Below are positions 6,072 to 37,157 of a stretch of DNA of 64,000 nucleotides, one piece after another. The DNA lies in the IMG/VR virus record IMGVR_UViG_3300014494_000005, positions 62,001 to 126,000 of that record; one strand, 5' to 3'. Within the stretch, counting starts at the first letter, position 1, and every line of letters starts with the position of its first letter. A model generated the notes under the pieces. That model did not search any database and was not told the DNA's origin. It saw nothing but the letters and a program-made list of their open reading frames with translations. A program made the position numbers and the translations under genes.

Positions 6072-6679
6072 TTAATTATTTTCAATTGTTTTAATCCAGC
6101 AAATCCAACAGCATAACTATCAGACATATCAAAACACATATCTTTTGGTTCTTTACTATCTTTTTTATAAAACCATTCAATTTGGGGTTCTAATTTACAA
6201 ACTTTTTCCCAGATATACAACTTTTTCTTATCACGATATTCAGGTGGAAATGAAAGCGTTTCAACTTTTTCTCCCTTTTTAAATGTAACTTTAACTAATT
6301 CAGAACAAAATATTTTACGTGAGTCATATACACTTATTTTCTTAGGATATAAACCAAATATAGTAAATAAAATATATCTACAAATACCATTGAATCCATA
6401 TAATAATGATACTGTGTTCGCATTATTGCTTCCACCAAGTGGTTCTTCTACAATAATATGTATTATTTCACCGTTAAGTTCATGTAATATACGTTCTTTA
6501 TATTCATTTACATATTTTCTAAAAATTTCTGCTTTATGAATATCTCTAATTTCAACAGGAATATTTTTATCAGTCTTTAATTCAAGATGTTTTAGTTCAA
6601 TAAGTTTTCCTTTATCAGACCATAAAGCACTTCCAATATTAGTTGTACTTATATCTAATGACCATATGTATTTTTCCAT
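6068..6679 (-). CDS. RuvC-like Holliday junction resolvase
   Basis: SLDISTTNIG (D), IIVEEP (E), DMSDSYAVG (DxxD) RNase H-fold catalytic pattern. Confidence 0.75.
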   Translation of the reverse strand: MEKYIWSLDISTTNIGSALWSDKGKLIELKHLELKTDKNIPVEIRDIHKAEIFRKYVNEYKERILHELNGEIIHIIVEEPLGGSNNANTVSLLYGFNGICRYILFTIFGLYPKKISVYDSRKIFCSELVKVTFKKGEKVETLSFPPEYRDKKKLYIWEKVCKLEPQIEWFYKKDSKEPKDMCFDMSDSYAVGFAGLKQLKIIK

Positions 6680-20671: not shown

Positions 20672-21070
20672 TTAAAAATTTAAATCAATATTACCTTCTT
20701 CATTAAGTACACCTTCAGTATATACAAACTTAATATTAACATTTAATTGACTATCAGATATTGGTTGTCCATTATCATCAACAAGTTTATTAAATGTTAC
20801 AGAAGTTATTTTAATCTCTGGAATATATAATGAAACAGTATTTTTTATTTCCTCTTCTATTTGACTTGAAGTTAAATCATCATTTGGTTCAAATATATAT
20901 TTTAATAAATTTGTACCATAATCAGGTTCATAATATCTTTCATTTTTTTGTGTCAATAAAAGTAAAAGCAAGTTAGAACTATATGAATCTTTAGTTACTT
21001 GATTCATTAAAAGAAACGAATTAGTTGCTTGGTCATCTTGAAATGGATAGGTAATATTATAAGAATTCAT
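20672..21070 (-). CDS. Baseplate wedge subunit, T4 gp25-like
   Basis: NL..LLLTQKNERYYEPDYGTNL.KYIFEP...IEEEIK.TV..YIPEI. Confidence 0.85.
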   Translation of the reverse strand: MNSYNITYPFQDDQATNSFLLMNQVTKDSYSSNLLLLLLTQKNERYYEPDYGTNLLKYIFEPNDDLTSSQIEEEIKNTVSLYIPEIKITSVTFNKLVDDNGQPISDSQLNVNIKFVYTEGVLNEEGNIDLNF

Positions 21071-21085
21071 TGTAATTATTTTTTA

Positions 21086-21094
21086 TATAAATAC
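21086..21094 (-). promoter_or_regulatory. Phage GTATTTATA upstream motif
   Basis: 16 nt before ATG 21070 (gp25-like), immediately after a terminator. Confidence 0.75.
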
Positions 21095-21102
21095 TTAATA
21101 AA

Positions 21103-21132
21103 TAAAAAATCCCGACAAACTTGCCGGGATTT
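21103..21132 (-). terminator. Intrinsic terminator
   Basis: AAATCCCGACAA / TTGCCGGGATTT stem (G-U on minus) then U-tract. Confidence 0.75.
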
Positions 21133-21151
21133 AATATTATTAATAATTTAT

Positions 21152-21616
21152 TTACATTTGCTTTGGTTTTCTACCTCGTTTACCTTTTGTTAATGCTTTT
21201 GCCTCATCCTCTTTTTGTTTTTTTACATCATAAAGGCTTTTAATTGATTCATGTAATGTAATAATTGGAGCATGTCCATATTTTTCTAATACACCAGTAT
21301 GTGTATTGAAATTAGGTTTCTCTAATGAAACTGTGTCTGTTTCATTGACACTTACACCTGCAAGACATTCAACAATTGCAATTTCTTGTAAGTCTGGGGG
21401 TAATTGGTCGAAAATTTCTTCGTTAAAAATGACCGCAAAATTAATACCATTTGTTAATACCTCTACAAGGTCATTTGTTTTAACGATTTTATAAAGTTCC
21501 TTTTGTTTATTGTTACAAAGAACTTCAAATTCAAGCCAATTTTTGATTGTTGTTTTACTTTTAATTTCACCGAAAAGATTAATCATTTCTTCTGATGCTT
21601 TTTCAATTTTTGCCAT
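21152..21616 (-). CDS. Phage metallopeptidase-like fold, apparently lacking HExxH
   Basis: FAVIFNEE.FD.L...Q.IAIVECLAG...P.F..H..V..KYG resembles the putative phage metallopeptidase family. Confidence 0.45.
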   Translation of the reverse strand: MAKIEKASEEMINLFGEIKSKTTIKNWLEFEVLCNNKQKELYKIVKTNDLVEVLTNGINFAVIFNEEIFDQLPPDLQEIAIVECLAGVSVNETDTVSLEKPNFNTHTGVLEKYGHAPIITLHESIKSLYDVKKQKEDEAKALTKGKRGRKPKQM

Positions 21617-21627
21617 AATAATTATTT

Positions 21628-22137
21628 TTAATTGTTAATAATAGAATTCTTATATTTCATATTTATTTGATTAATTTTTTCAAGTAAGTTTGTAAATATT
21701 GGATTCTTTGCTTCAAATTCTTTACCAAATTTTTCTTCAAGTTCTTTGGTAAAAGATAATAAATCTTGAATGCTTGCTTTCAACATATCTTCAATTTCGA
21801 TAAGTGTTTCAAGTTGTTTATCAGCCAAATTTGTTAATCCAGCAATTCGTTTATTTTCTTCATCACTTTCTTTCATTTCTTGCATTTTTTTTTCATATTC
21901 TGAATTAAGTATAAGTACTTCTTCTTCACTTACAGTTTTAATACCTGCTTTTTTTACACGGTCATTAATTGATTTTGATAAATCACTATCATCAATAGAT
22001 ATATTAGGTTTTGTCATTGTTGATAATTTTTCATCTGCTAATTTATCAATTTCAATTATTTTTTTTGCTGCTTCTGAATTAAACTCACCAGTATCAACTG
22101 CTTTTTTGAGTTTTTCTAAAAAACTTGAATCTGCCAT
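21628..22137 (-). CDS. Hypothetical coiled-coil protein
   Basis: 169-aa E/K-rich ORF. Confidence 0.65.
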   Translation of the reverse strand: MADSSFLEKLKKAVDTGEFNSEAAKKIIEIDKLADEKLSTMTKPNISIDDSDLSKSINDRVKKAGIKTVSEEEVLILNSEYEKKMQEMKESDEENKRIAGLTNLADKQLETLIEIEDMLKASIQDLLSFTKELEEKFGKEFEAKNPIFTNLLEKINQINMKYKNSIINN

Positions 22138-25184: not shown

Positions 25185-25967
25185 TTAAATAAAATTTAAT
25201 GTGCTTTTTGGTTTAATTTTATTTTCTATTGTTGGACATAATCCACAACACAATTCTTCTTTTGTAGATAAAAATTTTTTTAATTCATCATTTGAACAAT
25301 TTGAACTTAATGGTTGATACATATCAAATTCTTTCCAATATTGTTTTATTTCAGGATATTTTATTTTTTGTAATTGATAATATGTTACAATTGGACATTT
25401 CCATAATTTGCCATCATATAATTGTTTGCAAGAAACATCCCAACATACACTATAACTTTTTTTGGGATTATTTTCATTATGAAATGGTCGTATTAAATTA
25501 TCAATTCCGTTATATCTTTTAGACCAAATTTTAGTATTATCTATCACATCATATTTTATATCATATTTATTAACCCATTGATTTACCAATTCTAAATTTT
25601 CGTTTAAATTATGACCATGTAATGATATTTTTAAAAATATATTATTATTTTTTAAATAAATGGGCAAATTTGGATATTTATGTAATAATAATCCGTTAGT
25701 TAATAATTTTATATTACTATTTTTAAAATAATTTCTTATTAATTCTAATATTTCGTATATTTGGGGATTTAAAAGTGGTTCACCACCAAGTAAATGTATA
25801 CTACAAGGTTGAATTTTTTTGTACCATAATAAAAAATCATTTTCAATTTCTTTTAATGTTAATATTTTATTATGTTTACTATTTGTAAGATGATTACAAC
25901 TTTCACAACTTAAATTACAAAGATGAGATATGTGATAATCAATATGAAAATTTGTTTCTATATCCAT
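25185..25967 (-). CDS. Radical SAM protein
   Basis: CNLSCESC (CxxxCxxC), LLGGEPLLNP, LLTNG, C-terminal Cys cluster (CWDVSC...KCP...CCGLC). Confidence 0.85.
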   Translation of the reverse strand: MDIETNFHIDYHISHLCNLSCESCNHLTNSKHNKILTLKEIENDFLLWYKKIQPCSIHLLGGEPLLNPQIYEILELIRNYFKNSNIKLLTNGLLLHKYPNLPIYLKNNNIFLKISLHGHNLNENLELVNQWVNKYDIKYDVIDNTKIWSKRYNGIDNLIRPFHNENNPKKSYSVCWDVSCKQLYDGKLWKCPIVTYYQLQKIKYPEIKQYWKEFDMYQPLSSNCSNDELKKFLSTKEELCCGLCPTIENKIKPKSTLNFI

Positions 25968-25987: not shown

Positions 25988-26011
25988 AAAAAAAGCCAAT
26001 AAAATATTGGC
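25988..26011 (-). terminator. Intrinsic terminator
   Basis: GCCAATA-aaa-TATTGGC then U7 on minus. Confidence 0.65.
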
Positions 26012-26038: not shown

Positions 26039-26410
26039 TTATATATGTGGTATATCTATCTCAGTATCTGTTTCTTCTTCTTTTTTAACTGATTTTTTTT
26101 TACTTTTTTGAACCGATTTTTTTTCTTCATCATCAATAACTTCTTTAGTAACTGTTTTGGTTTTTATATTATTCATTGATATAGCAAGTTCTGTACCATC
26201 AATTTCATCTACAGTTATTAAATTTTTAACTCTTAATCTATGTGCTGACAATGGTAATGATGATACCGTTAAATAAACAACATCACCCGGTTTTATACTA
26301 ATAACTTTTTTAGTCATTTTATCTACATAATCAATATCAAGTATTGATTTGTATTTAAAATCACGCTTTGAAGCGAGATTTGTTATGTTTGTAATTTTAA
26401 ATGTACCCAT
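26039..26410 (-). CDS. Hypothetical protein with basic/acidic tail
   Basis: 123-aa ORF followed by terminator. Confidence 0.6.
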   Translation of the reverse strand: MGTFKITNITNLASKRDFKYKSILDIDYVDKMTKKVISIKPGDVVYLTVSSLPLSAHRLRVKNLITVDEIDGTELAISMNNIKTKTVTKEVIDDEEKKSVQKSKKKSVKKEEETDTEIDIPHI

Positions 26411-26418
26411 ATTTTTAA

Positions 26419-27261
26419 TTATTTTAATCCTTGTATTAATGTATCGTTATATTTAATTCCATCATAACCATTTTTCATTGCTTTTTCTGCAATTGCTTTA
26501 TTTTTTAGATTCATTGATGGCACATTATATTGCTCACTTAATTTCTCAAAATTTACATGTGGAAACCAATTTTTTGCTAATATATCAACTGGTTCTTGTC
26601 CATCTTTATAAATAACACCTAATGCTTGTATGTCCAATAAATTTTCAAAATCAATTTCATATTTATCATATCCATCAATTGGTTTTAACATAAAAAAGTT
26701 TCCAATAACTGAATTTTCTTTAATTGGTTCTTTTCTATATGCGACAATTGTTTTTTCATTTTTACTTGGTGTTTCTGCTTGTAATGCAAGATTATCTTCT
26801 TCCAGAGAATCTAAAAATTCTGTATTTGTATTACCCTTACCACTTTCAGCATTATTATAATAATTGATTGCACCTTGATTTTCTACTTCTTCCATATTAC
26901 GTGCTTGCTCATATTCGTAAATATCTTGAATCTTATTTAATACCCTTGCTGTATCTTTTTCATTTAAATCAATTTTAATTGCTTTAAGTAACTCATTGTC
27001 AATTAATGCTTTAGTATATCTGTGGTGTCCATCAATTATTTGATTATCAATGCTTAACCAAATTGGATTCATATCATTAATATTACATTTTTCCATTTCA
27101 TCTGAATATACGACAGGTTGTGATGTTTTAATATCATCGTCTTCACTTGGATTTAATGAAATTAATTCATAATTTATACCTTCTTCATCAAGTTTTTGAA
27201 GAACTATTTCAAACGGTGCACTAACTTGTGGTAGATGATATGGTCTTCCATTTTTAAGCAT
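26419..27261 (-). CDS. ParB/Srx-like nuclease-domain protein
   Basis: PIWLS.DNQIIDGHHRY..A; upstream motif 27282. Confidence 0.65.
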   Translation of the reverse strand: MLKNGRPYHLPQVSAPFEIVLQKLDEEGINYELISLNPSEDDDIKTSQPVVYSDEMEKCNINDMNPIWLSIDNQIIDGHHRYTKALIDNELLKAIKIDLNEKDTARVLNKIQDIYEYEQARNMEEVENQGAINYYNNAESGKGNTNTEFLDSLEEDNLALQAETPSKNEKTIVAYRKEPIKENSVIGNFFMLKPIDGYDKYEIDFENLLDIQALGVIYKDGQEPVDILAKNWFPHVNFEKLSEQYNVPSMNLKNKAIAEKAMKNGYDGIKYNDTLIQGLK

Positions 27262-27297: not shown

Positions 27298-27864
27298 TTA
27301 ATTTTTTAATATATTTTGAATTTCTTCACGAATAATATTTAATATTGTAAATTTGTTTTCTAATAAAGATATTTTACCTTCTTTAGCTAAATATATGTTA
27401 AATCTAATACCTTTTGGAATCTGTTTCTTTATTGCTTCATAAGATTGAATATCAGTATCACGGTCTTCATAAACATTTATTTCCTTTAATTCTGGAAATT
27501 GCTGAATATAACGTAATGTTTTTTTACCCTTATCTGGTTCAGCACGTTTCATATCTACTTTATCAACACTAATATGATTTGCATCAAGTATTGCTTGAAC
27601 TTGTGGACGTAGTTTTTCCATTCTTGATGTAAGAATTACCACATAAGTATTTGGTTTTGCTTGTTCTTCTTTTAATTGTTTTAATACACTTGGAAATGGT
27701 TTAATATTGAAAACATTTAAATCCAAACTCTCAGGTCTGCCCCACCAACCTTGATATGGATATGGTTTTCCTATTTTCTCAGACCACTGAACTTTACCTA
27801 TTTCTTTTTCAGGACTCATTATGAGTGTCGAGTCAAAATCAAATACACAAAGTCTTTTTATCAT
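27298..27864 (-). CDS. HAD-family phosphatase (RNA-repair 'Swiss army knife' HAD type)
   Basis: CVFDFDSTL (DxD motif I), VILTSR (motif II), VYEDR (motif IV). Start moved to ATG 27864, overlapping the upstream TGA (ATGA). Confidence 0.8.
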   Translation of the reverse strand: MIKRLCVFDFDSTLIMSPEKEIGKVQWSEKIGKPYPYQGWWGRPESLDLNVFNIKPFPSVLKQLKEEQAKPNTYVVILTSRMEKLRPQVQAILDANHISVDKVDMKRAEPDKGKKTLRYIQQFPELKEINVYEDRDTDIQSYEAIKKQIPKGIRFNIYLAKEGKISLLENKFTILNIIREEIQNILKN

Positions 27865-28364
27865 AACAAACAATTATATTTCATTTCATTAATATTTCCT
27901 ATTTCTTCGCAATAAGGTTCAAAAAATCTTTTTGGTATTATATACATATCCATTTCTTTGAAAACACCTTTCTTTTGTTCAATCCTTGCTTTTTTCTTAT
28001 ATTCAATTTGATTTATATTTTCAACAATACAATCATGTATTCTTTTTGTTTTAGCAATATATGTAATTTTACCATCACTAATAATCCAATAATCAGCTTT
28101 TGTAATTAATAATCCTGATTGTCTTCCCCAATATCCGGTTTCAATACAAATATTGCCACTAATACTACCCATTTTATCAAATTTACATTCAATTGTTTTT
28201 TGTTTTTCTGCAAAGTTACCATTAAAAAGTATAATATCATAATAACTATATTCTTCTTTTTTCATATTTTTATATGCAAGAGGAAATAATTTTTCATTTA
28301 AATCTTTTAAACAAAAATCCTCAAATTCAAATCCCATTCTTGATGATTCTTTCCAATCAGCCAT
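27861..28364 (-). CDS. PD-(D/E)XK-family nuclease-like protein
   Basis: G.EFE.F, YDIILF, TIECKFD, then ICIET. Confidence 0.6.
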   Translation of the reverse strand: MADWKESSRMGFEFEDFCLKDLNEKLFPLAYKNMKKEEYSYYDIILFNGNFAEKQKTIECKFDKMGSISGNICIETGYWGRQSGLLITKADYWIISDGKITYIAKTKRIHDCIVENINQIEYKKKARIEQKKGVFKEMDMYIIPKRFFEPYCEEIGNINEMKYNCLL

Positions 28365-28365
28365 G

Positions 28366-28749
28366 TTATTTATATTCTACTTCAGTTACTTTACCTGTCA
28401 CAAATATAGGTCTTTTTAATGGTTGCCAATTAATTAATTTATTTGACATCATTGGTTTACCACCATTTGCTCGATTAACAGCCATTGTTATATGTGCTTT
28501 AGCATTATGCGTTTCAAAACCACTGACACCAACAGCCATTACTTTATCATCTATAGCGAATTCATTAACACTTAATCGTACTGGTAATCCTAAATATTTT
28601 TCAAGTTCTGGGTCAATTTCACCCATGTTTATTGTCATATGGTCACAAATTATTTTCCAATCATTAGGAATTATTGAACTAAAACGTTCAATAAGTCGTT
28701 GTTTTGACCTATCATCAAGAACGACTGCACTATAAGATATGTTATTCAT
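28366..28749 (-). CDS. 2H phosphoesterase (cyclic phosphodiesterase, tRNA-ligase CPD-like)
   Basis: Two HxT motifs: CDHMTIN and KAHITMA. Confidence 0.75.
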   Translation of the reverse strand: MNNISYSAVVLDDRSKQRLIERFSSIIPNDWKIICDHMTINMGEIDPELEKYLGLPVRLSVNEFAIDDKVMAVGVSGFETHNAKAHITMAVNRANGGKPMMSNKLINWQPLKRPIFVTGKVTEVEYK

Positions 28750-29405
28750 TAATATGTAAATTTTGTTAAAACATTATAATTTTTGTTTAATGCTTTTAAT
28801 GCTATTTCAACTTCTTTAAAGCATTCATTAATACCACCACCACATATTACTAATTTACCTGAAAATTTTTTTAAATAATCCATTAAGTCTGGTATATTAA
28901 TACAATCTTGTGCTGGTTCTAAAAGGTCACGAACAACACTTGTATCATAATCATATTGTCGCATAAATCCATTCCACATTTCTTCATCAATATCACGACT
29001 ATCATTAATATTGTGTTGAATCATATATTTAACAAGATTAACTGTTTCATCTTCTTCAGCACCTTCATCCATACAGGTTCTAAAAAAAGCATAACCTTTA
29101 TCTAAGTATTTGATAACCTGTAAATTATCTTCTTCCAATCCATTTTCTAACAACCACATTTTATAATCATTTTCACTTATCATACCTAATGTATCAGCAC
29201 CATTATATAATAAAGTAATTGAATTCATGTTATAAATATTTTCATTAATAAATTTTGTAAATTGATAAATATTAAAAGTAAAACCTTTTTCATATTCTGG
29301 TTGAATATCAACAGAAATTAAATTAGCGTTTTGAACAAGATTAATTCCAGAATCTTCCAATAATTTATTACGTTGCTGTTCTTTAATTATAATTTCTCTT
29401 TTCAT
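28749..29405 (-). CDS. Cysteine hydrolase (isochorismatase/nicotinamidase-like) fold protein
   Basis: LISVDIQP (catalytic D) and LVICGGGINECF (catalytic C); leader MKREIII.EQQ...LLE. Confidence 0.5.
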   Translation of the reverse strand: MKREIIIKEQQRNKLLEDSGINLVQNANLISVDIQPEYEKGFTFNIYQFTKFINENIYNMNSITLLYNGADTLGMISENDYKMWLLENGLEEDNLQVIKYLDKGYAFFRTCMDEGAEEDETVNLVKYMIQHNINDSRDIDEEMWNGFMRQYDYDTSVVRDLLEPAQDCINIPDLMDYLKKFSGKLVICGGGINECFKEVEIALKALNKNYNVLTKFTY

Positions 29406-29435
29406 TTAGTTAAAATTTCTTTTATGAAGATGTTT

Positions 29436-32400
29436 TTAAGCATAAAATATTTTATTTTTAATTGGTATTGCTTGCGGAGAATCCATAATATCTTCACCAT
29501 TTATATATAATTCTTCAATTTTTAATGATGTATTTTTAAATAATGTTATTTCTTTTTCATCTTCGCCAAGAGCCAAATCCATATTAGCATATATTGTATT
29601 AGTCCAATCAATATTGTCTTCTTTCACAGATGTTTTTATTATTGCTTTATTATATTTTTTACTATCTCCCCAATGTGCTTCAGCAGCATTTTCTTCCCAA
29701 GACCAATAAATACCTAAATGTTTTCCTTGTGTACCAATATGATAAATCCAATTATCATCAACTGTCATTTCTCTCCAAATATCAATAGTATCATTTGGTT
29801 TTATTTTTTCTTTTATTTTATCTATTACATCATCATATTTATATTTTAATTCCCATATAAACCATTCTTTAAAATCTTCATTTTGTTCAATAACTTCCTT
29901 ATCTTCATCCTCCAAATTATTTTCATATTTATAATATTCAATATATCTTTCATAATTATCACTACGTTTCACATCTTTTATATATTGCGGTGTTATTATA
30001 TTATCTGAAGTTATTGAATCAATTGGTGTTTCATTTAAAACATCATTATCTGTAAGTTTCCATAATAATTTATGTTTTAATTTTTCATTATGGCTAAAAT
30101 CTTCATAATTATTTTGTAAAAATTCTAATACTGATGCTTCATTTGGGTCTGAATATTCTGCTCTTCCTCTTCCACTTTCAGTATTCCATATATCATATTC
30201 TTTAGCAAAGAAATTAATATCAACTATTTTATTGTTTACAACATATTTACCATCACCAACTTCATGATATTCTTCAGTAAGATTAATAGGCATACTACCA
30301 TATTTAATAAGACCATAATATTCTAAATAAAAATCATATTGTGGATTTTTTCTTTTTGTTGCACGTAATATTTCAATTGATGTTTCTTTTTGGTCTTCAC
30401 CTCTTTGAATAAATTCTTCACCCGAATCACTCAATCCAAAATTATTAGAATCACTTACTCTTTGTAATACTTGATAATTGAAATTATTATATACATATTC
30501 GGTAATTCCTAATATATCTGCCATATCTGCATGATTAAAAGCACCATCAGATTGTGCAACAAATAAGTTTCCATCACTATCAGCAATTGCTCTAACATTT
30601 TTATCAAAATTAGTTAACGATTTTGGATTCTTAAAAAATAAATCACCCTCTTCACTAATTGCATATGGTTTTTCTTTATTTTTTTCTATACCACCCATTG
30701 CTTTAACATCCATTGCAGTATTTGAATCAGGAACATTAAAAGTTTTTTCTGCATATTTATCTGCAACACCTTCTTGTTTTATTGATTTATTTTTTTGACT
30801 TGTCAAATTTAATAAATCATCTCGATTATTCCTAACATTATTTGAATATACCTTTAACAATAATGATTTTAACATATCACCAATCTCTTTACCTTTTAAT
30901 CCAAATTGAATTAAATCATTGCCATTAATTGCTAGTTCACCAACTGCTTTTGGATATTTGCCTTGTAATAATTCTTGTGCTGCGGTTTCAATTACACTAG
31001 GTATTATTTGGCTTTGAAGTGATTGTGGTGATGTTACATACATATTATGCACAACTGTTCGTGCTTCAATTAAATTAGTTGCTTCACCACTATCAAATGC
31101 CATTTCAAGTGCTTTAATTTCCTTATAAGTATCAATATCACCCTTTAAATTATTTTTATAAAATTCTGCAGGATTTGGTAATAATCGTATTAATAAATAA
31201 ATAAACTCACCTATTGTTTTAACTTCTTCAAATGGACTTCTATCAATTGTTGATTGTTTTAAATCAAAATTAAAAATTTGTTGAAATAAACCAGTGTCTT
31301 TAAGTAGTTGTATACCAATACGTTTGTCACCTTTTTTTAAAATTTTATCGAACTCAATTAATATTCTTTCTGGCGGAATTTCTTTAATACGACTTGCATT
31401 ATCTTTAATCATTTGCATTGTTTGTGGTTCAATTGTAAAATCAAAACGACTTGCAAACCCTATCATTCGCATCATACGTAATGGGTCATCTGAAAATGCC
31501 TGTGGATTTGCAGCAGAAATTTGTTTATTTTTTATATCTTCCAATCCACCGAGTGGGTCAATAAATTTACCTGAATTAATATTAATTGCCATTGCATTCA
31601 GCTTTGCGTCACGTCTCGTCAAATCATCTTCAATTGGAAGATTTTCATCACTCTGAACATCAAAACCATGATAACCACCTTCACCATTTGGTTTTTCTTT
31701 ACGTGGTAACGCTATATCATAATCAGTACCATCTTTATCAATAAATTTTATAACACCAAATGATTTGCCAACAACATCAACTTTACCAAATTTTTGTAAT
31801 TGCGATATTAATAAATCAATTGATGTGTTTCTAACAATTAAATCAATATCTTTATTGGGTTTGTTAAGTACCAAATCTCTCACAACCCCACCAACAGCAT
31901 AAATTTCAGACCCTAAGTCATTTATAAGTGATTGAATAAATGGTTTTTGTTTTAAATTATTTACAAATTCAGTAATTTTATTATTTGGTTGTATATTGTT
32001 TTCGCACATATTCTCTGCAATATTTATTGAATCTAAATCAAAAACTACTTTAGCTGGAAATGATGAAATTCCTAATTCTCGTAATGCATCAAATCTATGA
32101 CCACCTTCTAAAACATATGAACCATCTTCATCAATAACAACAATTAGTGGACTAATTTCTTTATTATATTCAATCTGTTTTGCTAATTTTTTTGTTTTTT
32201 GTTCTTCATCAGGAGAATAATATTTTAAATCTCCCATTTGTGGAAATGAATTGAATGAAACTTCTCTAATTCCATTAAGTATTTCATAATTTGTTAATGA
32301 TGCTTCAATTGAATTCATGTTTGGAACATCATTTCGAATTATTAATCCATTAATATTATTTCCATTTATTATTGGAAATTCATGATTTAATGTTTCATAA

Positions 32401-32498
32401 CTAAAATTTTGTGCATTACTGATAACAGATTCATTAATTTGTTTTCTCATATAATTTTCAAATAATATTATTTCACTATTAATAATGTCTATTAGCAT
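29436..32498 (-). CDS. Polyvalent protein: ParB-like + class II CCA-adding/poly(A) polymerase-family nucleotidyltransferase + two unknown domains + ADP-ribosyltransferase-like domain
   Basis: EGGHRFDAL (ParB); YAVGGVVRDL...KDIDL, DDLTRRDAKLNAMA, FSDDPLRMMR, PERI..EF.K (CCA); IWRE / GIYWSW / EDEKEI (R-S-E ART). Start moved to MLIDII (32498), 13 nt from the motif. Confidence 0.85.
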   Translation of the reverse strand: MLIDIINSEIILFENYMRKQINESVISNAQNFSYETLNHEFPIINGNNINGLIIRNDVPNMNSIEASLTNYEILNGIREVSFNSFPQMGDLKYYSPDEEQKTKKLAKQIEYNKEISPLIVVIDEDGSYVLEGGHRFDALRELGISSFPAKVVFDLDSINIAENMCENNIQPNNKITEFVNNLKQKPFIQSLINDLGSEIYAVGGVVRDLVLNKPNKDIDLIVRNTSIDLLISQLQKFGKVDVVGKSFGVIKFIDKDGTDYDIALPRKEKPNGEGGYHGFDVQSDENLPIEDDLTRRDAKLNAMAININSGKFIDPLGGLEDIKNKQISAANPQAFSDDPLRMMRMIGFASRFDFTIEPQTMQMIKDNASRIKEIPPERILIEFDKILKKGDKRIGIQLLKDTGLFQQIFNFDLKQSTIDRSPFEEVKTIGEFIYLLIRLLPNPAEFYKNNLKGDIDTYKEIKALEMAFDSGEATNLIEARTVVHNMYVTSPQSLQSQIIPSVIETAAQELLQGKYPKAVGELAINGNDLIQFGLKGKEIGDMLKSLLLKVYSNNVRNNRDDLLNLTSQKNKSIKQEGVADKYAEKTFNVPDSNTAMDVKAMGGIEKNKEKPYAISEEGDLFFKNPKSLTNFDKNVRAIADSDGNLFVAQSDGAFNHADMADILGITEYVYNNFNYQVLQRVSDSNNFGLSDSGEEFIQRGEDQKETSIEILRATKRKNPQYDFYLEYYGLIKYGSMPINLTEEYHEVGDGKYVVNNKIVDINFFAKEYDIWNTESGRGRAEYSDPNEASVLEFLQNNYEDFSHNEKLKHKLLWKLTDNDVLNETPIDSITSDNIITPQYIKDVKRSDNYERYIEYYKYENNLEDEDKEVIEQNEDFKEWFIWELKYKYDDVIDKIKEKIKPNDTIDIWREMTVDDNWIYHIGTQGKHLGIYWSWEENAAEAHWGDSKKYNKAIIKTSVKEDNIDWTNTIYANMDLALGEDEKEITLFKNTSLKIEELYINGEDIMDSPQAIPIKNKIFYA

Positions 32499-32510
32499 AA
32501 AAATCTTTAA

Positions 32511-32519
32511 TATAAATAC
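32511..32519 (-). promoter_or_regulatory. Phage GTATTTATA upstream motif (leftward of divergent pair)
   Basis: 13 nt before ATG 32498. Confidence 0.75.
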
Positions 32520-32589
32520 AATAAAAAAAATCAATATTTAAAATTTTAAATAAAATTTTGTCCATCATAATAAAATATTAATTATTGTA

Positions 32590-32664: not shown

Positions 32665-33669
32665 ATGAAAAATTATGATATAAACGAAATTGCAAATTTA
32701 TATTTTATAAAAAAATACTCATTAGAAAAAATAGGAAAACTCATGCACGTACAGCCAAAAAAAATTAGCAATTTATTAAAGATAAATGGATATGTTTTAG
32801 ATAATAGGTCTCATGATGGTAATAGTAGAAGATATTATGTTGATAAAAATTTTTTTAAAAAAATTGATAATAAAAATAAAGCATATGTATTAGGATTAAT
32901 TATTTCAGATGGTTGCATTTATAAAAATGCAATTACATTCACATCTAAAGATATTGAGTTGGTTGAAATCTTAAAGAGAGAACTTAAATCCGAACATAAA
33001 TTAGCAACATATAATGTTTTTGATAAAAGAACAAATAAATATTATTTAAGAAATTCATTATCAATTCCATCTAAAGAAATTATTAATGATTTAAATAATT
33101 TGGGTGTTTTTTCTAAGAAATCCTTTGATTGTCAAATGCCAAATATACCTGAAGAATATTTTTGGCATTTTGTTAGAGGTATTTTTGATGGTGATGGAAC
33201 AATATTTAAAGCAACATCAAATAAGGAAGGATGTTTATATTTTTCAATTATTGGGTCGGAAAATTTATTGACAGAAATAAAAAATAAATTTAATTTAGTG
33301 GGAATATCTAATACAAAAATAATTAATACTGATTATAAATCAAACAATGGACATCTTATTAGAATTAATTACCATTCATTTCATGATGTTAATATATTAA
33401 AAAATAAAATATATTGTGATTCTGAAGACTTAAGGTTATCAAGAAAATATGATTTATTTCAAACACTAAGAGAATATAAAAAAGGTAATTTTGACCACAC
33501 AAAACAATTACGACAAATAAAAATGTATGATTTAAATAATAATTTTATTAAACATTTTAATAATTTTCATGAAGTAAAAAAAGAAACAGGATTATCATAT
33601 AAATCAATTCATAGAGTTGCGATGGGTATTAGAAAAAACACCAAAAAATATATATTTAAATATATTTAA
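32665..33669 (+). mobile_element. Free-standing two-motif LAGLIDADG homing endonuclease with C-terminal NUMOD1-like HTH
   Basis: AYVLGLIISDGCI and FVRGIFDGDGTI; C-terminal IKMYDLNNNFIKHF.N..E....G...I; only plus-strand gene. Confidence 0.85.
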
Positions 33670-36600
33670 TTTATTTTTTTCTTGTGTTCTCTTGCATAAT
33701 TATTTACAAACTTATTATATATATTTTCACTTATTTTATGATTCATACCGCTTTTTACTTTTTTTCTAAATTCTACTTCTGCTTTATTGGCAATTTCATG
33801 TGCACCATCTTTGCCACTATCGTCATTACTATACTTTAAGCCATAATATTTCATTAAATGTCTTTCTAGCGTTTCATGTAAAAGTATTGCACCTAAATCA
33901 TCAGGTTTAATTAAAAATACATCATCAATCCAAATTTCGTCTTCAGGAATATATTTAGCATATTTTTGCTCTTTCTTTGGTAAATCCAAATCAACGTAAT
34001 GATGTCCACCGTCAACATATTCATCGAACGAATTTTTTCTCACATGGTCACCATTAATTGCATATACTTTATAGTCATCTTCTTGAAATAAGAACAATTT
34101 ATCTAATCCATGTATTTTATTGTCTTTTTCAATTTGCTTTTCAAAATCCTTAAATGATTGTTCATTAAGATTATTATTTTTCATTAAAACTAAATAACCA
34201 CCATCACCATCTTCAGCAATAATTTCGCCAGTTAAATCAAATTCATCAATATCTGAAAAATCATTTTCATTTGAATATCTTGTAGCATCTTCAAATGTTT
34301 TTGTAACCCAGACAATATTATTAGCAGGATATTTATTCAATTCAGCTAATTTTTCTTCAGGTATATTCATTTCTTCATTACCAAGTTCATCTCTTTCAAA
34401 CCTAACAACATCTCCAGCAGATGTACCTTTTTTTTGTGAAAATAAACTATCTACCCGATATGCTTTACCAATATAATTAACATTTTCATTAATTGTTTTA
34501 ATATCAAGATTATTAATATCACCTTGATTACAAGCTACACTTGTATTTCCCAAACCACCTAATCTACATTTCTTTTTTACTGTAACAGCTTGTGCTCCTT
34601 TCATAAATGATTTTTTTCCAATTTCATCAAGAGCAAATTTATCTTGTGTTGCATCACCTACAACATGATGATATTCTAAATCTTCTTTTACACTTTCTGG
34701 AGTTGTTGGTACGTTATTATCTGTAACTGGAGATGTATCATTATTTTCATATGGTGGAAAATTATCCTGTCCAATACTATTTGGTGTTGAGAATTTTGAA
34801 GTTCCATCTTCAGTTATTTTTATATTTTCTGCACCATTCGGTTGTAAGTAACCATTACTAAATCCCACATCAAAAAATGCAATTACTCCATTTTTTTTAT
34901 ATCCTAAATTAGTATAATTAAAATAATCCAAACTTTCAACTCCATATTGTTTTGCTTCTTCAGCAATTCTTAATATAGAATAAAAAAATTCAGCATCTTC
35001 TGGATTTTTTGACATATATCCATCAATTTTTTTTGTATCTATGTCCCCATATCCATTTATATAATAATCAATAATATCATAAAGTCTGAGATTAAATATT
35101 TTTCCAAAAATAAAATCAATTCTTTCTTTAAGTCTTTTAAATTTTTGTGGGTCTGTTTTTAATTTTTCCAAAACAATTGCATATGTTTTAGAAATATATG
35201 TATTTTTTGAATCGATTGTAAATACATTATATGGTTGTGCTATATATTTTAATGGTTTATTTATAAGTTTTAAATTTTCTGCTGCTTCACTATTATCTGC
35301 AGTTATTTTTAAAATTTTATCATCACCAATATCATAAGCAACACCATATTCACCAGCATCAATAAATTTTGGTTCGTTATATCCTCTTATTTTAGCAATT
35401 TGTTTTGCGATATTATCTGCAATATTTCTATTATATTTTTCATCTAATATTTCTTCGTTTTCAGGTAAAAATATAATATTTGCATCTCCCAAATCAGGTT
35501 CATTAACGCCATAATAATCACCAACATCAAAAAATTTTAAAATACCATCCTCATATCCAAGATTTTTGGGATTACTATAATCATCTGATTTAATATTATA
35601 ACTCAACAGTTCTTTTTTTATTTCAAATAATTCTATTAACCAATCATATGCTTGTTGTCTTTCAATATTAGAAATATTTACTTCAGGTTTTTCTGTAAGT
35701 ATATTTTTTGCCAAATTAACTAAATTATTATAATCAAAACGTTTTTTCATTATAATATAGAAATCAACTGTCGTCATATCATTTGGCATAATAGTATCTA
35801 TTATTTCAACATTTCGAACAAATTGTTGAACTGGTTTGTCAATAATATTACGTTCAATTATTCCAAAAAATGATTTATTTTTTTCAGTATCAACTATTTT
35901 ATATATATTGTAAACAATTGCAATATGTATTGGTTTTACTCTTATTAATTTAGCTGCAGCATCTGCTTCACTAATATCAGTAGTAAGTTTTAAAATCTTT
36001 GTATCTCCAATATCAAATACATGACCACCAGTACTACCTGCCATATATTCTATAGTTTTTATTCCTAATTTTTCTGCAATTGAATTTGCTAATTGAATTG
36101 CATAATTTTTATCAAATACGATGTCTTGAACTTGTGGTACTTCATGTTTAATATCTTCATTTATAACATATTCTTCACTACTAAGTGGTTCTCTATCATA
36201 ATAATTTTGTGAAATAAGATATTTTTGAAGTTCTAATAAATTATTATAAAATTTTTTCTTATCATCAACATGATTTAATGTTTCCTTAAGATTATTTACA
36301 CATTCATGAAAATTATCTACAAGTTGTGGCATATTTTTTATAGGCTTATTTGGATATATGCTTCTTCTTATAATAAATTCTTTAAATTCTTCATTTATTA
36401 CACCATCGCCATCACCTACACCATATGGCATTAATGCCCACATTCCATGTCTTTGGTCTTGTCCAACGTTACCTATATCGGAAAGAATATCATCATTACC
36501 ATTAGCAAAATTATACAATTCATACATGTGATATTTTTGTTTTTTTTGAGGACTATAATGAGTATCATATACTTCATCATTAAGACCATAATCAGTTAAT

Positions 36601-37157
36601 ACAATTGTGGGTTGACCATCATGAAGTACTTCACCATAAGAACTTGGTCTACTTAAATCACCAACATTTATTGAATAATTTGCAACAAAATCAATTAAAT
36701 CAATAACAAATTCATTATTATCTAATTGATTTTTAATATTTTCATCTTGTCCAAATATTGGTCTACCACCTCTATTTTCAGATTCATAGTTTCTTAAATA
36801 ATAAAATAAATCGCTAAGACTTGGAATACCAGTTAATTCTTTGATTCTCTTTTCACCCACCTTTTTTACTTTTTCCGCAATCAACCAACTATCATCATCT
36901 GCATTGTCATAAATAATTGTAACAATATGTTGTGTATCTCTATAATATCCAATATTGGCTTCGGCTTCATTTTGTGCAATACCTTTTTGATTTTTTGCTA
37001 ATTTTAATACTTTCTGACCATCAATATCATAAACAATTCTACCACTACCACTACCAATTCTTGATAGATGTTCATTAGCATATTGTATTCTACTTGCAAA
37101 TGATTTTATGTTAAGAAATTCCGTTAAGAAATTCTGTTTAAATTCATCGTATGTCAT
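33666..37157 (-). CDS. Polyvalent protein: three tandem protein-kinase-like domains + ART-like domain + zincin metallopeptidase
   Basis: Gly loops GSGSGRIVY / AGSTGGHVF / AGEYGVAY; VLKL / ILKL / ILKI; D...N.G and DYG/DVG x3; AYR...WVT..A.RY; LLHETLE...AHEIA. Confidence 0.85.
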   Translation of the reverse strand: MTYDEFKQNFLTEFLNIKSFASRIQYANEHLSRIGSGSGRIVYDIDGQKVLKLAKNQKGIAQNEAEANIGYYRDTQHIVTIIYDNADDDSWLIAEKVKKVGEKRIKELTGIPSLSDLFYYLRNYESENRGGRPIFGQDENIKNQLDNNEFVIDLIDFVANYSINVGDLSRPSSYGEVLHDGQPTIVLTDYGLNDEVYDTHYSPQKKQKYHMYELYNFANGNDDILSDIGNVGQDQRHGMWALMPYGVGDGDGVINEEFKEFIIRRSIYPNKPIKNMPQLVDNFHECVNNLKETLNHVDDKKKFYNNLLELQKYLISQNYYDREPLSSEEYVINEDIKHEVPQVQDIVFDKNYAIQLANSIAEKLGIKTIEYMAGSTGGHVFDIGDTKILKLTTDISEADAAAKLIRVKPIHIAIVYNIYKIVDTEKNKSFFGIIERNIIDKPVQQFVRNVEIIDTIMPNDMTTVDFYIIMKKRFDYNNLVNLAKNILTEKPEVNISNIERQQAYDWLIELFEIKKELLSYNIKSDDYSNPKNLGYEDGILKFFDVGDYYGVNEPDLGDANIIFLPENEEILDEKYNRNIADNIAKQIAKIRGYNEPKFIDAGEYGVAYDIGDDKILKITADNSEAAENLKLINKPLKYIAQPYNVFTIDSKNTYISKTYAIVLEKLKTDPQKFKRLKERIDFIFGKIFNLRLYDIIDYYINGYGDIDTKKIDGYMSKNPEDAEFFYSILRIAEEAKQYGVESLDYFNYTNLGYKKNGVIAFFDVGFSNGYLQPNGAENIKITEDGTSKFSTPNSIGQDNFPPYENNDTSPVTDNNVPTTPESVKEDLEYHHVVGDATQDKFALDEIGKKSFMKGAQAVTVKKKCRLGGLGNTSVACNQGDINNLDIKTINENVNYIGKAYRVDSLFSQKKGTSAGDVVRFERDELGNEEMNIPEEKLAELNKYPANNIVWVTKTFEDATRYSNENDFSDIDEFDLTGEIIAEDGDGGYLVLMKNNNLNEQSFKDFEKQIEKDNKIHGLDKLFLFQEDDYKVYAINGDHVRKNSFDEYVDGGHHYVDLDLPKKEQKYAKYIPEDEIWIDDVFLIKPDDLGAILLHETLERHLMKYYGLKYSNDDSGKDGAHEIANKAEVEFRKKVKSGMNHKISENIYNKFVNNYAREHKKKIN

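What the first reader, a model, noticed from the sequence alone, without database searches (positions are those of the whole stretch)
27298..31967. Putative tRNA 3'-end healing pathway: 2H phosphodiesterase + HAD phosphatase + CCA enzyme, with no ligase in view
Seen: adjacent 2H (two HxT motifs) and HAD (DxD) genes directly downstream of the CCA-containing polyprotein. Established: 2H enzymes open 2',3'-cyclic phosphates and HAD phosphatases remove 3'-phosphates. In eukaryotes, tRNAs whose CCA end was cut off are repaired by cyclic-phosphate removal followed by CCA re-addition (ELAC1/TRNT1). Inference: the phage may counter host tRNases that clip acceptor ends, which differs from T4 Pnk/Rnl1 anticodon repair.
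Basis: inference. Interest (0 to 1): 0.65.

Follow-up and report, generated by a model that had tools for sequence, protein, structure and literature searches.

The report
Phage tRNA 3'-end repair module
A 349-kb peat-soil phage encodes, in one tight gene row, a CCA-adding enzyme, a cyclic-phosphate-opening 2H enzyme and a HAD phosphatase that related phages fuse into single proteins, so the three most likely clean and rebuild tRNA 3' tails without a ligase.

Summary
The three enzymes are real. They are a class II CCA-adding nucleotidyltransferase inside a 1032-aa multidomain protein, a 127-aa mini-2H phosphodiesterase (two conserved HxT motifs, CNPase-like predicted fold), and a 191-aa HAD phosphatase of Pfam family HAD_SAK_1 with all four HAD motifs. 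They are not strictly adjacent: two variable genes (218 aa and 167 aa) lie between them.

The window holds no RNA ligase. The 349-kb genome holds two, 68 and 157 kb away, and only a remnant of a polynucleotide kinase gene.

The main new evidence is comparative. Of 81 related viral loci, 65 keep a CCA enzyme and 64 keep the HAD near the 2H, and 23 put CCA and 2H in one ORF. 2H-CCA-HAD and 2H-HAD fusions exist in two domain orders. That supports a coupled path: 2H, then HAD, then CCA addition.

The purpose is open. Only 2 of the phage's 33 tRNA genes encode CCA, so maturing its own tRNAs is as plausible as counter-defence. More distant copies of the same 2H family are fused to a kinase next to Rnl1.

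The idea parallels the E. coli CCA/HD repair enzyme and published jumbo-phage repair inventories. I rate it a new variant of a known kind, of moderate interest.

The parts
29436..32534 (-). 1032-aa multidomain protein holding the CCA-adding enzyme. A public gene call starts at residue 13.
   Evidence: ORF; Pfam and PHROG hits; the Atlas record starts at residue 13.
31980..32207 (-). ParB/Srx-like N-terminal domain (about residues 110-185, 'EGGHRF' at residue 143). It is fused to CCA in only 6 of 81 relatives.
   Evidence: phrog_1033 E 3.6e-7; PF02195 at 17.6 bits, below its cut-off.
30807..31910 (-). Class II CCA-adding nucleotidyltransferase core (residues 209-576). Motifs: GGVVRD at 215, DIDL at 229, RRD at 307, DDPLR at 349.
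   Evidence: PF01743 78 bits, PF12627 65 bits, PF13735 24 bits. The best NCBIfam hit is NF009814, a CCA tRNA nucleotidyltransferase model, full length at 165 bits, ahead of PcnB at 102 bits. Motif positions.
29439..30779 (-). C-terminal extension (residues 586-1032), function unknown. Domain D1 (30285-30776) occurs as 1-3 tandem copies in relatives. The last ~118 aa are found only in close relatives.
   Evidence: AlphaFold model pLDDT 77, with no PDB or Atlas fold match (best Z 5.0). No ligase or kinase fold was seen.
28749..29405 (-). 218-aa ORF, a variable insert present in 16 of 81 loci. A weak lead points to an isochorismatase-like hydrolase.
   Evidence: No Pfam, PHROG or NCBIfam hit. Atlas feature search ranks an Isochorismatase cluster 13th at 0.83..
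28366..28749 (-). 127-aa mini-2H cyclic phosphodiesterase. H37-M-T39 is at 28633-28641 and H86-I-T88 at 28486-28494.
   Evidence: PF08302 at 24.2 bits. 63-sequence alignment. Model pLDDT 95.3. Foldseek gives CNPase at E 1.7e-4, TMq 0.71-0.76, plus LigT-like 1vdx and 1iuh.
27861..28364 (-). 167-aa ORF, a variable insert present in 27 of 81 loci. It reads like a PD-(D/E)xK nuclease by eye only.
   Evidence: phrog_13596, unknown function. The nuclease reading rests on inspection of the sequence and was not tested.
27298..27873 (-). 191-aa HAD phosphatase of the HAD_SAK_1 family. Motif residues: D12, D14, T16, T82, K115, D137.
   Evidence: PF10307 at 32 bits. Motif conservation of at least 90% in 52 homologues..
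26419..27261 (-). 280-aa conserved neighbour of the HAD gene (63 of 81 loci), function unknown. It has a 'DGHHR' motif.
   Evidence: hhalign to the ParB-like domain is not significant. No PDB hit.
26039..26410 (-). 123-aa conserved neighbour (63 of 81 loci), function unknown. It is the last gene before a terminator-like hairpin at 25995-26011.
   Evidence: The terminator count does not exceed the shuffle expectation.
32665..33669 (+). Homing-endonuclease gene (334 aa) lying between g1163 and the CCA gene.
   Evidence: phrog_4645 endonuclease at E 8e-44. Paralogues in the genome and other insertion sites in relatives.
33666..37157 (-). 1163-aa protein of unknown function. In 12 related loci it is one ORF with CCA and 2H.
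   Evidence: Only phrog_4301 (unknown function) and no PDB hit.

Best explanation
The genes form a ligase-independent module that heals and rebuilds tRNA 3' ends. The proposed steps are all inferred:
1. A tRNA (or tRNA-like RNA) has its 3' tail cut by a metal-independent RNase and ends in a 2',3'-cyclic phosphate.
2. The mini-2H enzyme, which is CNPase/Trl1-CPD-like, opens the cyclic phosphate to a monoester, probably a 2'-phosphate.
3. The SAK-family HAD phosphatase removes the monoester.
4. The CCA-adding enzyme restores the missing C74, C75 and A76 on the free 3'-OH.

Only a few nucleotides are lost, not a 5' fragment, so neither a kinase nor a ligase is needed.

Shown here: the identity of the three enzyme families, the conservation of their catalytic residues, their tight same-strand arrangement, their conserved neighbourhood, and their fusion into single proteins in relatives. 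Inferred: the substrate, the order of steps and the product chemistry. Open: whether the module repairs host-inflicted damage (counter-defence), matures the phage's own CCA-less tRNAs, or does both.
For: **Family assignments.** Pfam, PHROG and NCBIfam hits. The 2H fold is supported by an AlphaFold model with pLDDT 95.3 that matches the CNPase catalytic domain. Both HxT motifs and all four HAD motifs are conserved.

**Gene arrangement.** The row from CCA to p123 has gaps of -13 to +36 nt on one strand, and no terminator-like site before 26011.

**Neighbourhood.** Among 81 IMG/VR loci with a 2H homologue (42-100% identity), a CCA core lies within 10 kb in 65 and the HAD in 64.

**Fusions.**
- 23 loci carry CCA and 2H in one ORF.
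- L087 (708 aa) and P0009 (714 aa) are 2H-CCA-HAD_SAK_1.
- L052 and L064 are CCA-2H, the opposite domain order, which implies independent fusion events.
- L089 is 2H-HAD.
- A search of 5.8 billion proteins lists dozens of ~700-aa (2H-)CCA-HAD and ~565-aa CCA-HAD proteins at 44-86% identity, on contigs up to 540 kb.

**Distance from ligase repair in this genome.**
- The RNA ligases lie 68 and 157 kb from the module.
- No AAA_33 kinase is detected.
- At the syntenic NADAR-kinase-HD site only a remnant of the kinase gene is left. This suggests that a separate kinase+HD pair, not 2H+HAD, serves the ligases in relatives.

**A ready substrate pool.** Only 2 of 33 phage tRNA genes encode CCA. Five related genomes carrying the module have 23-55 tRNA genes each.
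Against: - No biochemical data exist for any member of this clade.
- Most of the 81 loci belong to one phage clade with general synteny. g1163, p280, p123 and p462 are conserved to the same extent, so adjacency alone is weak. The argument rests mainly on the fusions.
- The same 2H family is fused to an AAA_33 kinase 2 kb from an Rnl1 homologue in L085 and L086, and to a weak RNA-ligase-like region in L091. The 2H is therefore not exclusive to the CCA route.
- The usual tRNA 3' processing enzymes (RNase Z, exonucleases) leave a 3'-OH and would need no 2H or HAD. No source of cyclic-phosphate tRNA 3' ends was found: no ribozyme appears in the tRNA island.
- The CCA core scores below NCBIfam equivalog cut-offs, and CCA-adding cannot be told from poly(A)-adding by sequence alone.
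- A complex prediction for the CCA core with the 2H gave no verdict.
Confidence: 0.6

Rival explanations
1. Classical heal-and-seal repair. The 2H and HAD enzymes prepare 3' ends of tRNAs broken in the anticodon loop for the phage's ATP-dependent RNA ligases (Rnl1-like, DRB0094-type), as T4 Pnkp does for Rnl1. Their position next to the CCA gene would then reflect a general RNA-repair neighbourhood, not a dedicated CCA pathway.
For: - The genome encodes an Rnl1-like ligase inside the tRNA island and a DRB0094-family ligase next to a Thg1-like enzyme.
- In L085 and L086 the same 2H family is fused to an AAA_33 kinase about 2 kb from an Rnl1 homologue. L091 joins the 2H to a weak RNA_ligase match.
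- Iyer et al. 2021 (PMC7824862) interpret jumbo-phage 2H and SAK-HAD enzymes this way.
- Related genomes each have an AAA_33 kinase.
Against: - In this genome the ligases are 68 and 157 kb away, and the kinase gene is reduced to a remnant. Sealing 5'-OH breaks would need that kinase.
- In relatives the kinase is paired with its own HD phosphoesterase.
- 23 of 81 loci fuse the 2H to CCA, and at most three to a kinase or a ligase-like region.
- The two roles are not mutually exclusive.
Confidence: 0.15
2. Unlinked housekeeping. The CCA enzyme only completes the phage's own CCA-less tRNAs after ordinary 3'-OH-leaving processing. The 2H and HAD genes do something else, and the fusions reflect the habit of these phages of stringing unrelated enzymes into polyvalent proteins.
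For: - Only 2 of 33 tRNA genes encode CCA, and relatives carry 23-55 tRNA genes.
- Relatives' CCA proteins also carry unrelated domains: ART-PolyVal, NUDIX, GNAT and an Acb1-like 2H. They are also fused to the unknown g1163. Fusion partners are therefore promiscuous.
- Kienbeck et al. 2024 (PMC10879173) report strong enrichment of CCA enzymes in tRNA-rich recoded phages.
Against: - The CPD-type 2H and HAD_SAK_1 are by far the most recurrent partners, and they recur in two domain orders and as a 2H-HAD pair without CCA.
- Both belong to families defined by RNA-end chemistry (PF08302, PF10307).
Confidence: 0.15
3. Signal quenching. The 2H enzyme degrades host immune nucleotide signals (2'-5' or cyclic oligonucleotides, ADP-ribose cyclic phosphates), and the HAD acts as a nucleotidase on the products. 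This is the role proposed for 2H domains of phage polyvalent proteins that are not linked to ligases.
For: - Iyer et al. 2017 (PMC5512222) propose this for ligase-unlinked phage 2H domains.
- Relatives' polyproteins include Acb1-like 2H and NUDIX domains.
Against: - The window's 2H matches the tRNA-ligase CPD family and CNPase, not Acb1.
- In P0082 a CPD-type and an Acb1-type 2H sit in the same protein, implying different jobs.
- Kinase-2H fusions next to Rnl1 tie this family to RNA ends.
Confidence: 0.08

Closest known systems
E. coli multifunctional CCA addition/repair protein (Cca: class II CCA enzyme with a C-terminal HD domain that has 2',3'-cyclic phosphodiesterase, 2'-nucleotidase and phosphatase activities; Yakunin et al. 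2004, from my own knowledge; NCBIfam NF008137)
   Same: It couples CCA addition to phosphoesterase activities that could clear a blocked tRNA 3' end, without a ligase. The head domains are homologous: NF008137 matches residues 15-226 of the core.
   Different: The phage protein has no HD domain (no PF01966 hit). The proposed healing activities sit in unrelated folds (2H and HAD), encoded as separate genes here and fused in relatives. This would be an analogous solution, not the same family.
Phage T4 Pnkp + Rnl1 (and Rnl2) anticodon-loop repair
   Same: It is a phage-encoded repair of tRNA ends left by metal-independent RNases. T4 Pnkp's phosphatase is also a DxDxT (HAD-type) enzyme (PMC3592404, listed).
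   Different: There is no kinase domain and no adjacent ligase here. The cyclic phosphate is assigned to a separate 2H enzyme, and the end is extended by a nucleotidyltransferase rather than sealed.
Fungal and plant tRNA ligase Trl1 CPD domain, and vertebrate CNPase (2H enzymes that open 2',3'-cyclic phosphates to 2'-phosphates)
   Same: These are the best sequence family (PF08302) and the best structural match (CNPase) for the 127-aa protein. Both HxT motifs are present.
   Different: The phage protein is about 40% smaller than the CNPase catalytic domains it matches (204-222 residues), and it stands alone. In Trl1 the 2'-phosphate stays at the junction and is removed by Tpt1. Here a HAD phosphatase is the likely remover.
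Eukaryotic ANKZF1/Vms1 - ELAC1 - TRNT1 tRNA recycling
   Same: The logic is the same: a tRNA lacking CCA and ending in a cyclic phosphate is cleaned and then re-extended by the CCA enzyme.
   Different: The cleaning enzyme there is a metallo-beta-lactamase (ELAC1), not 2H plus HAD. The context is ribosome quality control, not a phage.
Jumbo-phage RNA-repair inventory and 'Swiss Army Knife' HAD family (Iyer et al. 2021, PMC7824862; Burroughs & Aravind 2016, not readable here)
   Same: 2H enzymes, stand-alone SAK-type HAD phosphatases, CCA-adding enzymes, Thg1 and Rnl1/Rnl2 ligases are all listed as jumbo-phage RNA-repair parts.
   Different: In that text 2H and HAD are assigned to preparing ends for ligases, and the CCA enzyme is treated separately. 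A direct 2H-HAD-CCA linkage and its fusions are not described in the sections I read.
Polyvalent proteins of phages (Iyer et al. 2017, PMC5512222)
   Same: These are large proteins combining disparate enzymatic domains. ParB-like, 2H, ART-PolyVal, GNAT and NUDIX domains occur in the window's protein or in its relatives.
   Different: CCA-adding enzymes are not among the domains that paper describes: 'CCA' occurs 0 times, and its Pol-beta NTase is a minimal type from conjugative elements. The gene sits near a DNA polymerase gene, not among virion genes.

Membership tests
2H phosphoesterase superfamily (CNPase / tRNA-ligase CPD branch) | Two H-x-T/S motifs, one in each lobe | tested here: met
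   H37-M-T39 and H86-I-T88. In 63 homologues H37 and T39 are invariant and H86, I87 and T88 are at least 90% conserved.
2H phosphoesterase superfamily (CNPase / tRNA-ligase CPD branch) | 2H fold | tested here: met
   AlphaFold model with pLDDT 95.3. The top Foldseek PDB hits are CNPase catalytic domains (E 1.7e-4, TMq 0.71-0.76) and LigT-like proteins 1vdx and 1iuh. A profile search of PDB sequences found nothing.
2H phosphoesterase superfamily (CNPase / tRNA-ligase CPD branch) | Score above the Pfam PF08302 gathering threshold | tested here: met
   24.2 bits against 23, which is marginal and covers only residues 56-108. Fused relatives score 25-26 bits.
2H phosphoesterase superfamily (CNPase / tRNA-ligase CPD branch) | Hydrolysis of RNA 2',3'-cyclic phosphate, and which monoester results | not testable with these tools
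   Needs an enzyme assay.
HAD superfamily, HAD_SAK_1 family (PF10307) | Motifs I (DxDxT), II (T/S), III (K) and IV (acidic) | tested here: met
   D12, D14, T16, T82, K115 and D137 are each at least 90% conserved in 52 homologues.
HAD superfamily, HAD_SAK_1 family (PF10307) | Score above the Pfam gathering threshold | tested here: met
   32 bits against 25.6.
Class II CCA-adding tRNA nucleotidyltransferase | Head domain with GGxVRD and DxD, plus the neck RNA-binding domain | tested here: met
   PF01743 at 78 bits and PF12627 at 65 bits. GGVVRD at 215, DIDL at 229, RRD at 307.
Class II CCA-adding tRNA nucleotidyltransferase | Nucleotide-template motif EDxxR | tested here: inconclusive
   The sequence reads DDPLR at residue 349. 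The D and R are kept, but the first position is D, not E.
Class II CCA-adding tRNA nucleotidyltransferase | Equivalog-level match to a curated CCA-enzyme model | tested here: not met
   The best hit is NF009814 at 165 bits against a cut-off of 290. It covers model positions 15-394 of 396 and outscores PcnB poly(A) polymerase at 102 bits.
Class II CCA-adding tRNA nucleotidyltransferase | CCA (not poly(A)) addition on tRNA | not testable with these tools
   Needs an enzyme assay.
E. coli-type multifunctional CCA addition/repair protein | C-terminal HD phosphohydrolase domain | tested here: not met
   No HD (PF01966) hit in the 1032-aa protein. NF008137 aligns only to model positions 2-207 of 409.
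T4-type Pnkp/Rnl1 heal-and-seal system | 5'-OH polynucleotide kinase | tested here: not met
   No PF13671 match in the genome. None of the five Walker-A proteins scanned against Pfam is a polynucleotide kinase; the five are AAA+ ATPases, a helicase, a RecA-like protein and a methyltransferase. There is a kinase remnant at G000:~6072-6490.
T4-type Pnkp/Rnl1 heal-and-seal system | RNA ligase encoded with the healing enzymes | tested here: not met
   The ligases lie at G000:21016-22059 and 248051-249142. The module lies at G000:89298-94534.
Phage polyvalent proteins (Iyer 2017) | Several disparate enzymatic domains in one polypeptide | tested here: inconclusive
   The window's protein has a ParB-like domain, the CCA core and unknown domains. 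Relatives add ART-PolyVal, NUDIX, GNAT and 2H domains.
Phage polyvalent proteins (Iyer 2017) | Late or virion gene context, packaging into the virion | tested here: not met
   Of the nearby genes that could be named, one is a DNA polymerase (41948-45619) and one a radical SAM enzyme. Tail-fibre-like proteins start about 18 kb away. Packaging itself cannot be tested here.
Swiss Army Knife RNA repair proteins (Burroughs & Aravind 2016) | The defining architecture as given in the original paper | not tested
   The paper (PMC5062991) is not held in the library. Only the Pfam family names could be used.

The most novel reading that the evidence does not exclude
Huge phages carry a dedicated, ligase-independent tRNA 3'-end repair pathway (CPD-type 2H, then SAK-type HAD, then CCA-adding enzyme), often welded into one polyvalent protein. 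The pathway would exist because something regularly leaves phosphate-blocked, CCA-less tRNA ends during infection. That something could be a still-unrecognised class of host defence nucleases or 3'-end-modifying toxins aimed at the acceptor end, or an unconventional cyclic-phosphate-leaving step in the processing of the phage's own CCA-less tRNAs.
Probability: 0.3. Interest if true: 0.7.

Novelty: new variant of a known kind. Interest (0 to 1): 0.5.

Why it matters
If the coupling is real, there would be a second route of phage tRNA repair besides the T4 heal-and-seal model. This route would fix the acceptor end rather than the anticodon loop. It would predict that hosts, or the phages' own tRNA processing, produce phosphate-blocked, CCA-less tRNAs.

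It would also assign a function to over a thousand unannotated 127-aa 'hypothetical proteins' and to dozens of 560-750-aa CCA fusion proteins in environmental huge phages.

The natural single-chain 2H-CCA-HAD enzymes would be convenient reagents for a test in the tube.

The concept itself is not new: the E. coli Cca HD domain and the eukaryotic ELAC1/TRNT1 recycling follow the same logic. The gain is a new enzymatic implementation and a new biological setting.

Tried and rejected
- **Apparent 2H remnant in the C-terminal extension.** An iterative search (jackhmmer) suggested that residues ~835-908 of the 1032-aa protein are homologous to the 2H. A direct profile comparison gave probability 0.1%, so this was over-extension through the fusion proteins.
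- **Hidden ligase or kinase in the C-terminal 447 aa.** Pfam found nothing and a profile search of PDB sequences found nothing. The AlphaFold model (pLDDT 77) had no convincing match in PDB by Foldseek, PDB by VIA-align or the Atlas (best Z 5.0, a small winged-helix-like part). The Atlas feature search gave only chance-level leads.
- **Self-cleaving ribozymes after the tRNA genes.** HDV-like 'theta' ribozymes would leave cyclic-phosphate tRNA ends (PMC10879173). Rfam at E<=1 over 36 kb of the tRNA island found none. My strict structural descriptor found 0 hits genome-wide, but it was not validated on a known ribozyme. A relaxed version was uninformative: 15 of 33 tRNA ends against 9.2 at random positions. 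After the discriminator base, 31 of the 33 genes continue with C, not the G that starts HDV-like ribozymes. The idea is not supported and not strictly excluded.
- **Complex prediction, CCA core with 2H.** No verdict (score 0.00). This is neither evidence for nor against binding.
- **p280 as a ParB/Srx protein.** Only a 14-column motif match at probability 2%. It stays a lead.
- **Nucleotide search against isolated phages.** No match. The protein-level search found only 26-31% identity hits, in Agrobacterium phage Atu_ph07 and one uncultured phage.
- **Read laying.** Expression evidence is limited to the listing: 6 peat metatranscriptome runs hold 19-81% of the sampled words.
- **Burroughs & Aravind 2016.** This is the source of the 'Swiss Army Knife' name. 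It could not be read.
- **Promoter scan.** Uninformative in this AT-rich DNA: 106 sites found against 115 expected.

Full report
**Setting.** The window is bases 62001-126000 of a 348,923-bp IMG/VR virus record. GC content runs at about 22-37% across the window, mostly near 25%. Near-identical DNA is held by 14 peat, permafrost and bioreactor metagenome runs. Part of it is held by six peat metatranscriptome runs. Almost all genes of the window lie on the minus strand.

**The observation.** The finding covers five consecutive minus-strand genes:
- 29436-32534, 1032 aa
- 28749-29405, 218 aa
- 28366-28749, 127 aa
- 27861-28364, 167 aa
- 27298-27873, 191 aa

Gaps between neighbours run from -13 to +30 nt. 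The row continues with two more conserved genes, 26419-27261 and 26039-26410. The only terminator-like hairpin on that strand comes at 25995-26011.

The 1032-aa protein has four parts:
- A weak ParB-like region, residues ~110-185 (phrog_1033).
- A class II nucleotidyltransferase core, residues 209-576. It matches PF01743 at 78 bits, PF12627 at 65 bits and phrog_2244 at E 4.5e-58. Its best NCBIfam match is the CCA tRNA nucleotidyltransferase model NF009814 over the model's full length, ahead of poly(A) polymerase but below the equivalog cut-off.
- The motifs GGVVRD, DIDL, RRD and DDPLR within that core.
- A 447-aa C-terminal extension.

The 127-aa protein has H37-M-T39 and H86-I-T88 and just passes the Pfam threshold for the tRNA-ligase cyclic phosphodiesterase domain. 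The 191-aa protein has DFDST and passes the threshold for HAD_SAK_1.

So the three enzymes are real. Two further ORFs are interleaved, so '2H and HAD adjacent, directly downstream of CCA' is only approximately right.

**Is the 2H assignment sound?** A 24-bit Pfam hit and two tripeptides would be thin on their own. I collected 63 distinct homologues. H37 and T39 are invariant, and H86-I-T88 is at least 90% conserved. An AlphaFold model built on that alignment has mean pLDDT 95.3. Its best PDB matches are CNPase catalytic domains (E 1.7e-4, TM by query 0.71-0.76) and LigT-like proteins. CNPase and the Trl1 CPD domain open 2',3'-cyclic phosphates to 2'-phosphates (established knowledge). A sequence-profile search of PDB found nothing, so the family is remote.

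For the HAD, D12, D14, T16, T82, K115 and D137 are each at least 90% conserved in 52 homologues.

**Ligases, kinases and tRNAs in the whole genome.**
- There is no RtcB.
- An Rnl1-like ligase lies at G000:248051-249142, inside the tRNA island and next to a Mom-family gene.
- A DRB0094-family ligase, above the NCBIfam cut-off, lies at 21016-22059 beside a Thg1-like enzyme, a radical SAM enzyme and a DNA ligase.
- No AAA_33-type kinase is detected.
- Five related complete or near-complete genomes each have such a kinase.
- In two of them it sits between a NADAR gene and an HD-domain gene. G000 keeps the NADAR and HD genes, but between them only the last ~21 codons of the kinase are recognisable, with stops upstream.
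- The genome has 33 tRNA genes by ARAGORN, mostly at 238-268 kb, plus a tmRNA gene. Only 2 of the 33 encode CCA. Most read N73-C-A/T-A.

**Comparative evidence.** A profile of the 2H found 80 related loci in IMG/VR, on contigs of up to 461 kb. Iterative searches with the window's proteins against all ORFs of these loci gave three results.

*Neighbourhood.* A CCA core lies within 10 kb of the 2H in 65 of 81 loci, and the HAD in 64. The 218-aa and 167-aa ORFs are variable, present in 16 and 27 loci. This clade is broadly syntenic, so adjacency alone proves little.

*Fusions.* These are more telling:
- 23 loci carry the CCA core and the 2H in one ORF. Twelve of those also include the upstream 1163-aa protein, giving ORFs of 1300-2400 aa.
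- L052 and L064 are 530-540-aa CCA-2H proteins.
- L087 (708 aa) is 2H-CCA-HAD_SAK_1, and L089 is 2H-HAD. Pfam confirms all of these.
- A search of 5.8 billion proteins with L087 lists dozens of ~700-aa and ~565-aa proteins with CCA plus HAD_SAK_1, with or without the 2H. They share 44-86% identity, lie on contigs up to 540 kb, and are named only generically.
- P0009 passes all three Pfam thresholds.
- The 2H sits N-terminal in one group and C-terminal in another, so the fusion arose more than once.

*The other side.* The most distant 2H homologues point elsewhere. L085 and L086 are AAA_33-kinase-2H proteins with an Rnl1 homologue 2 kb downstream. L091 joins the 2H to a weak RNA-ligase match. 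The family is thus a general RNA-end healing domain that is recruited both to ligase pathways and to the CCA enzyme.

**Interpretation.** The best reading is a 2H, then HAD, then CCA pathway acting on tRNA 3' ends, which needs neither kinase nor ligase. This genome has an intact module, distant ligases and a decayed kinase. In relatives the kinase is paired with its own HD phosphoesterase. Together these suggest a division of labour: kinase and HD serve the ligases, and 2H and HAD serve the CCA enzyme.

What produces the phosphate-blocked ends is unknown. I tested one attractive source, HDV-like 'theta' ribozymes. These are known to sit at the 3' ends of phage tRNAs, in phages enriched for CCA enzymes and DRB0094 ligases (PMC10879173). 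I found none.

With so few of its tRNA genes encoding CCA, and with 23-55 tRNA genes in relatives, maturation of the phage's own tRNAs is as plausible a purpose as counter-defence.

**Rivals.**
- Healing for the ligases in trans.
- Unlinked functions joined by the promiscuous domain-stringing of these phages. Relatives' CCA proteins also carry ART-PolyVal, NUDIX, GNAT and Acb1-like 2H domains.
- Signal-nucleotide degradation, as proposed for ligase-unlinked phage 2H domains (PMC5512222).

The recurrence of the CPD-type 2H and HAD_SAK_1 as partners speaks against the last two, as do the kinase-2H/Rnl1 relatives. So does the coexistence of CPD-type and Acb1-type 2H domains in one protein.

**Comparison with what is known.**
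- The logic matches the E. coli CCA enzyme, whose HD domain has cyclic phosphodiesterase and phosphatase activities (my knowledge; NCBIfam calls it a 'multifunctional CCA addition/repair protein'). The phage protein has no HD domain, so this would be a different implementation.
- Iyer et al. 2021 list 2H, stand-alone SAK-type HAD, CCA enzymes, Thg1 and ligases as jumbo-phage repair parts. They assign 2H and HAD to ligation and treat CCA separately.
- Iyer et al. 2017 describe polyvalent proteins but no CCA enzyme among their domains.
- The paper that named the SAK family could not be read, so prior description of these fusions cannot be excluded.

I rate the finding a new variant of a known kind.

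**Limits.**
- The complex prediction gave no verdict.
- The C-terminal extension, the 1163-aa partner and the two conserved downstream genes remain without a fold or function.

Noticed in passing
G000:244010-244372 (L005:8010-8372), outside the window: The phage encodes a tmRNA (Rfam RF00023 at 68.6 bits, gathering score 47). ARAGORN did not report it. Its gene ends in an encoded CCA, unlike nearly all the tRNA genes.
   Followed up: partly
G000:268386-268463 (L006:12386-12463), outside the window: There is a tRNA with anticodon CTA (amber-suppressor type; ARAGORN labels it Pyl). The window's ORFs read open under table 11, so I saw no sign of recoding here, but I did not examine late genes elsewhere.
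   Followed up: no
33 tRNA genes, G000:134525-282791: After the discriminator base, 29 of 33 genes read C then A or T then A (mostly 'CAA' or 'CTA'), and only 2 read CCA. The first C of CCA is thus encoded and the rest is not. The regularity is unexplained.
   Followed up: partly
G000:19338-25118 (L004:8338-14118): A second RNA-end cluster holds a Thg1-like 3'-5' polymerase, a radical SAM protein (a paralogue of window 25185-25967), a DRB0094-family RNA ligase with an N-terminal OB domain, and an ATP-dependent DNA ligase.
   Followed up: partly
G000:5509-6967: NADAR and HD-domain genes flank what looks like a decayed polynucleotide-kinase gene. Only the last ~21 codons are recognisable, at 6072-6134. 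Relatives G001 and G004 have an intact AAA_33 kinase there.
   Followed up: partly
G000:247186-249142 (L005:11186-13142): A Mom-family protein (PF25680) lies directly upstream of the Rnl1-like ligase, inside the tRNA island. A 2026 paper in the search list (PMC13219725) describes a viral enzyme that drives tRNA-dependent DNA hypermodification at adenine. I did not read it, so whether that enzyme is Mom is my assumption.
   Followed up: no
window 32665-33669 (+): A homing-endonuclease gene sits between the 1163-aa gene and the CCA gene, which form one ORF in 12 relatives. The same endonuclease family lies between 2H and HAD in L018 and L019, and it has 3-4 paralogues in this genome. It looks mobile and may have split the polyprotein gene.
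   Followed up: partly
window 26419-27261 (-): A 280-aa protein is conserved next to the HAD gene in 63 of 81 loci, with 69% mean column identity and many invariant residues. It carries a 'DGHHR' motif reminiscent of ParB/Srx enzymes, but no significant family or PDB match.
   Followed up: partly
window 30285-30776 (-); paralogue G000:281050-281604: The first domain of the CCA protein's C-terminal extension occurs as 1-3 tandem copies in relatives' polyproteins. It has invariant N, P, R, G, H and R residues and no known fold match.
   Followed up: partly
G000:34590-35051 and 30458-31048: There are two copies of a second 'Swiss Army Knife' HAD family (PF18143 HAD_SAK_2, 83 bits). One lies next to a LAGLIDADG homing-endonuclease gene.
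   Followed up: no
P0187, the 362,763-bp contig of locus L028: A related huge-phage contig carrying the 2H is filed in NCBI as a 'Candidatus Paceibacterota bacterium' MAG. This is probably a binning error.
   Followed up: no
Nothing was laid, and the places were left out of all later searches.
   Followed up: no
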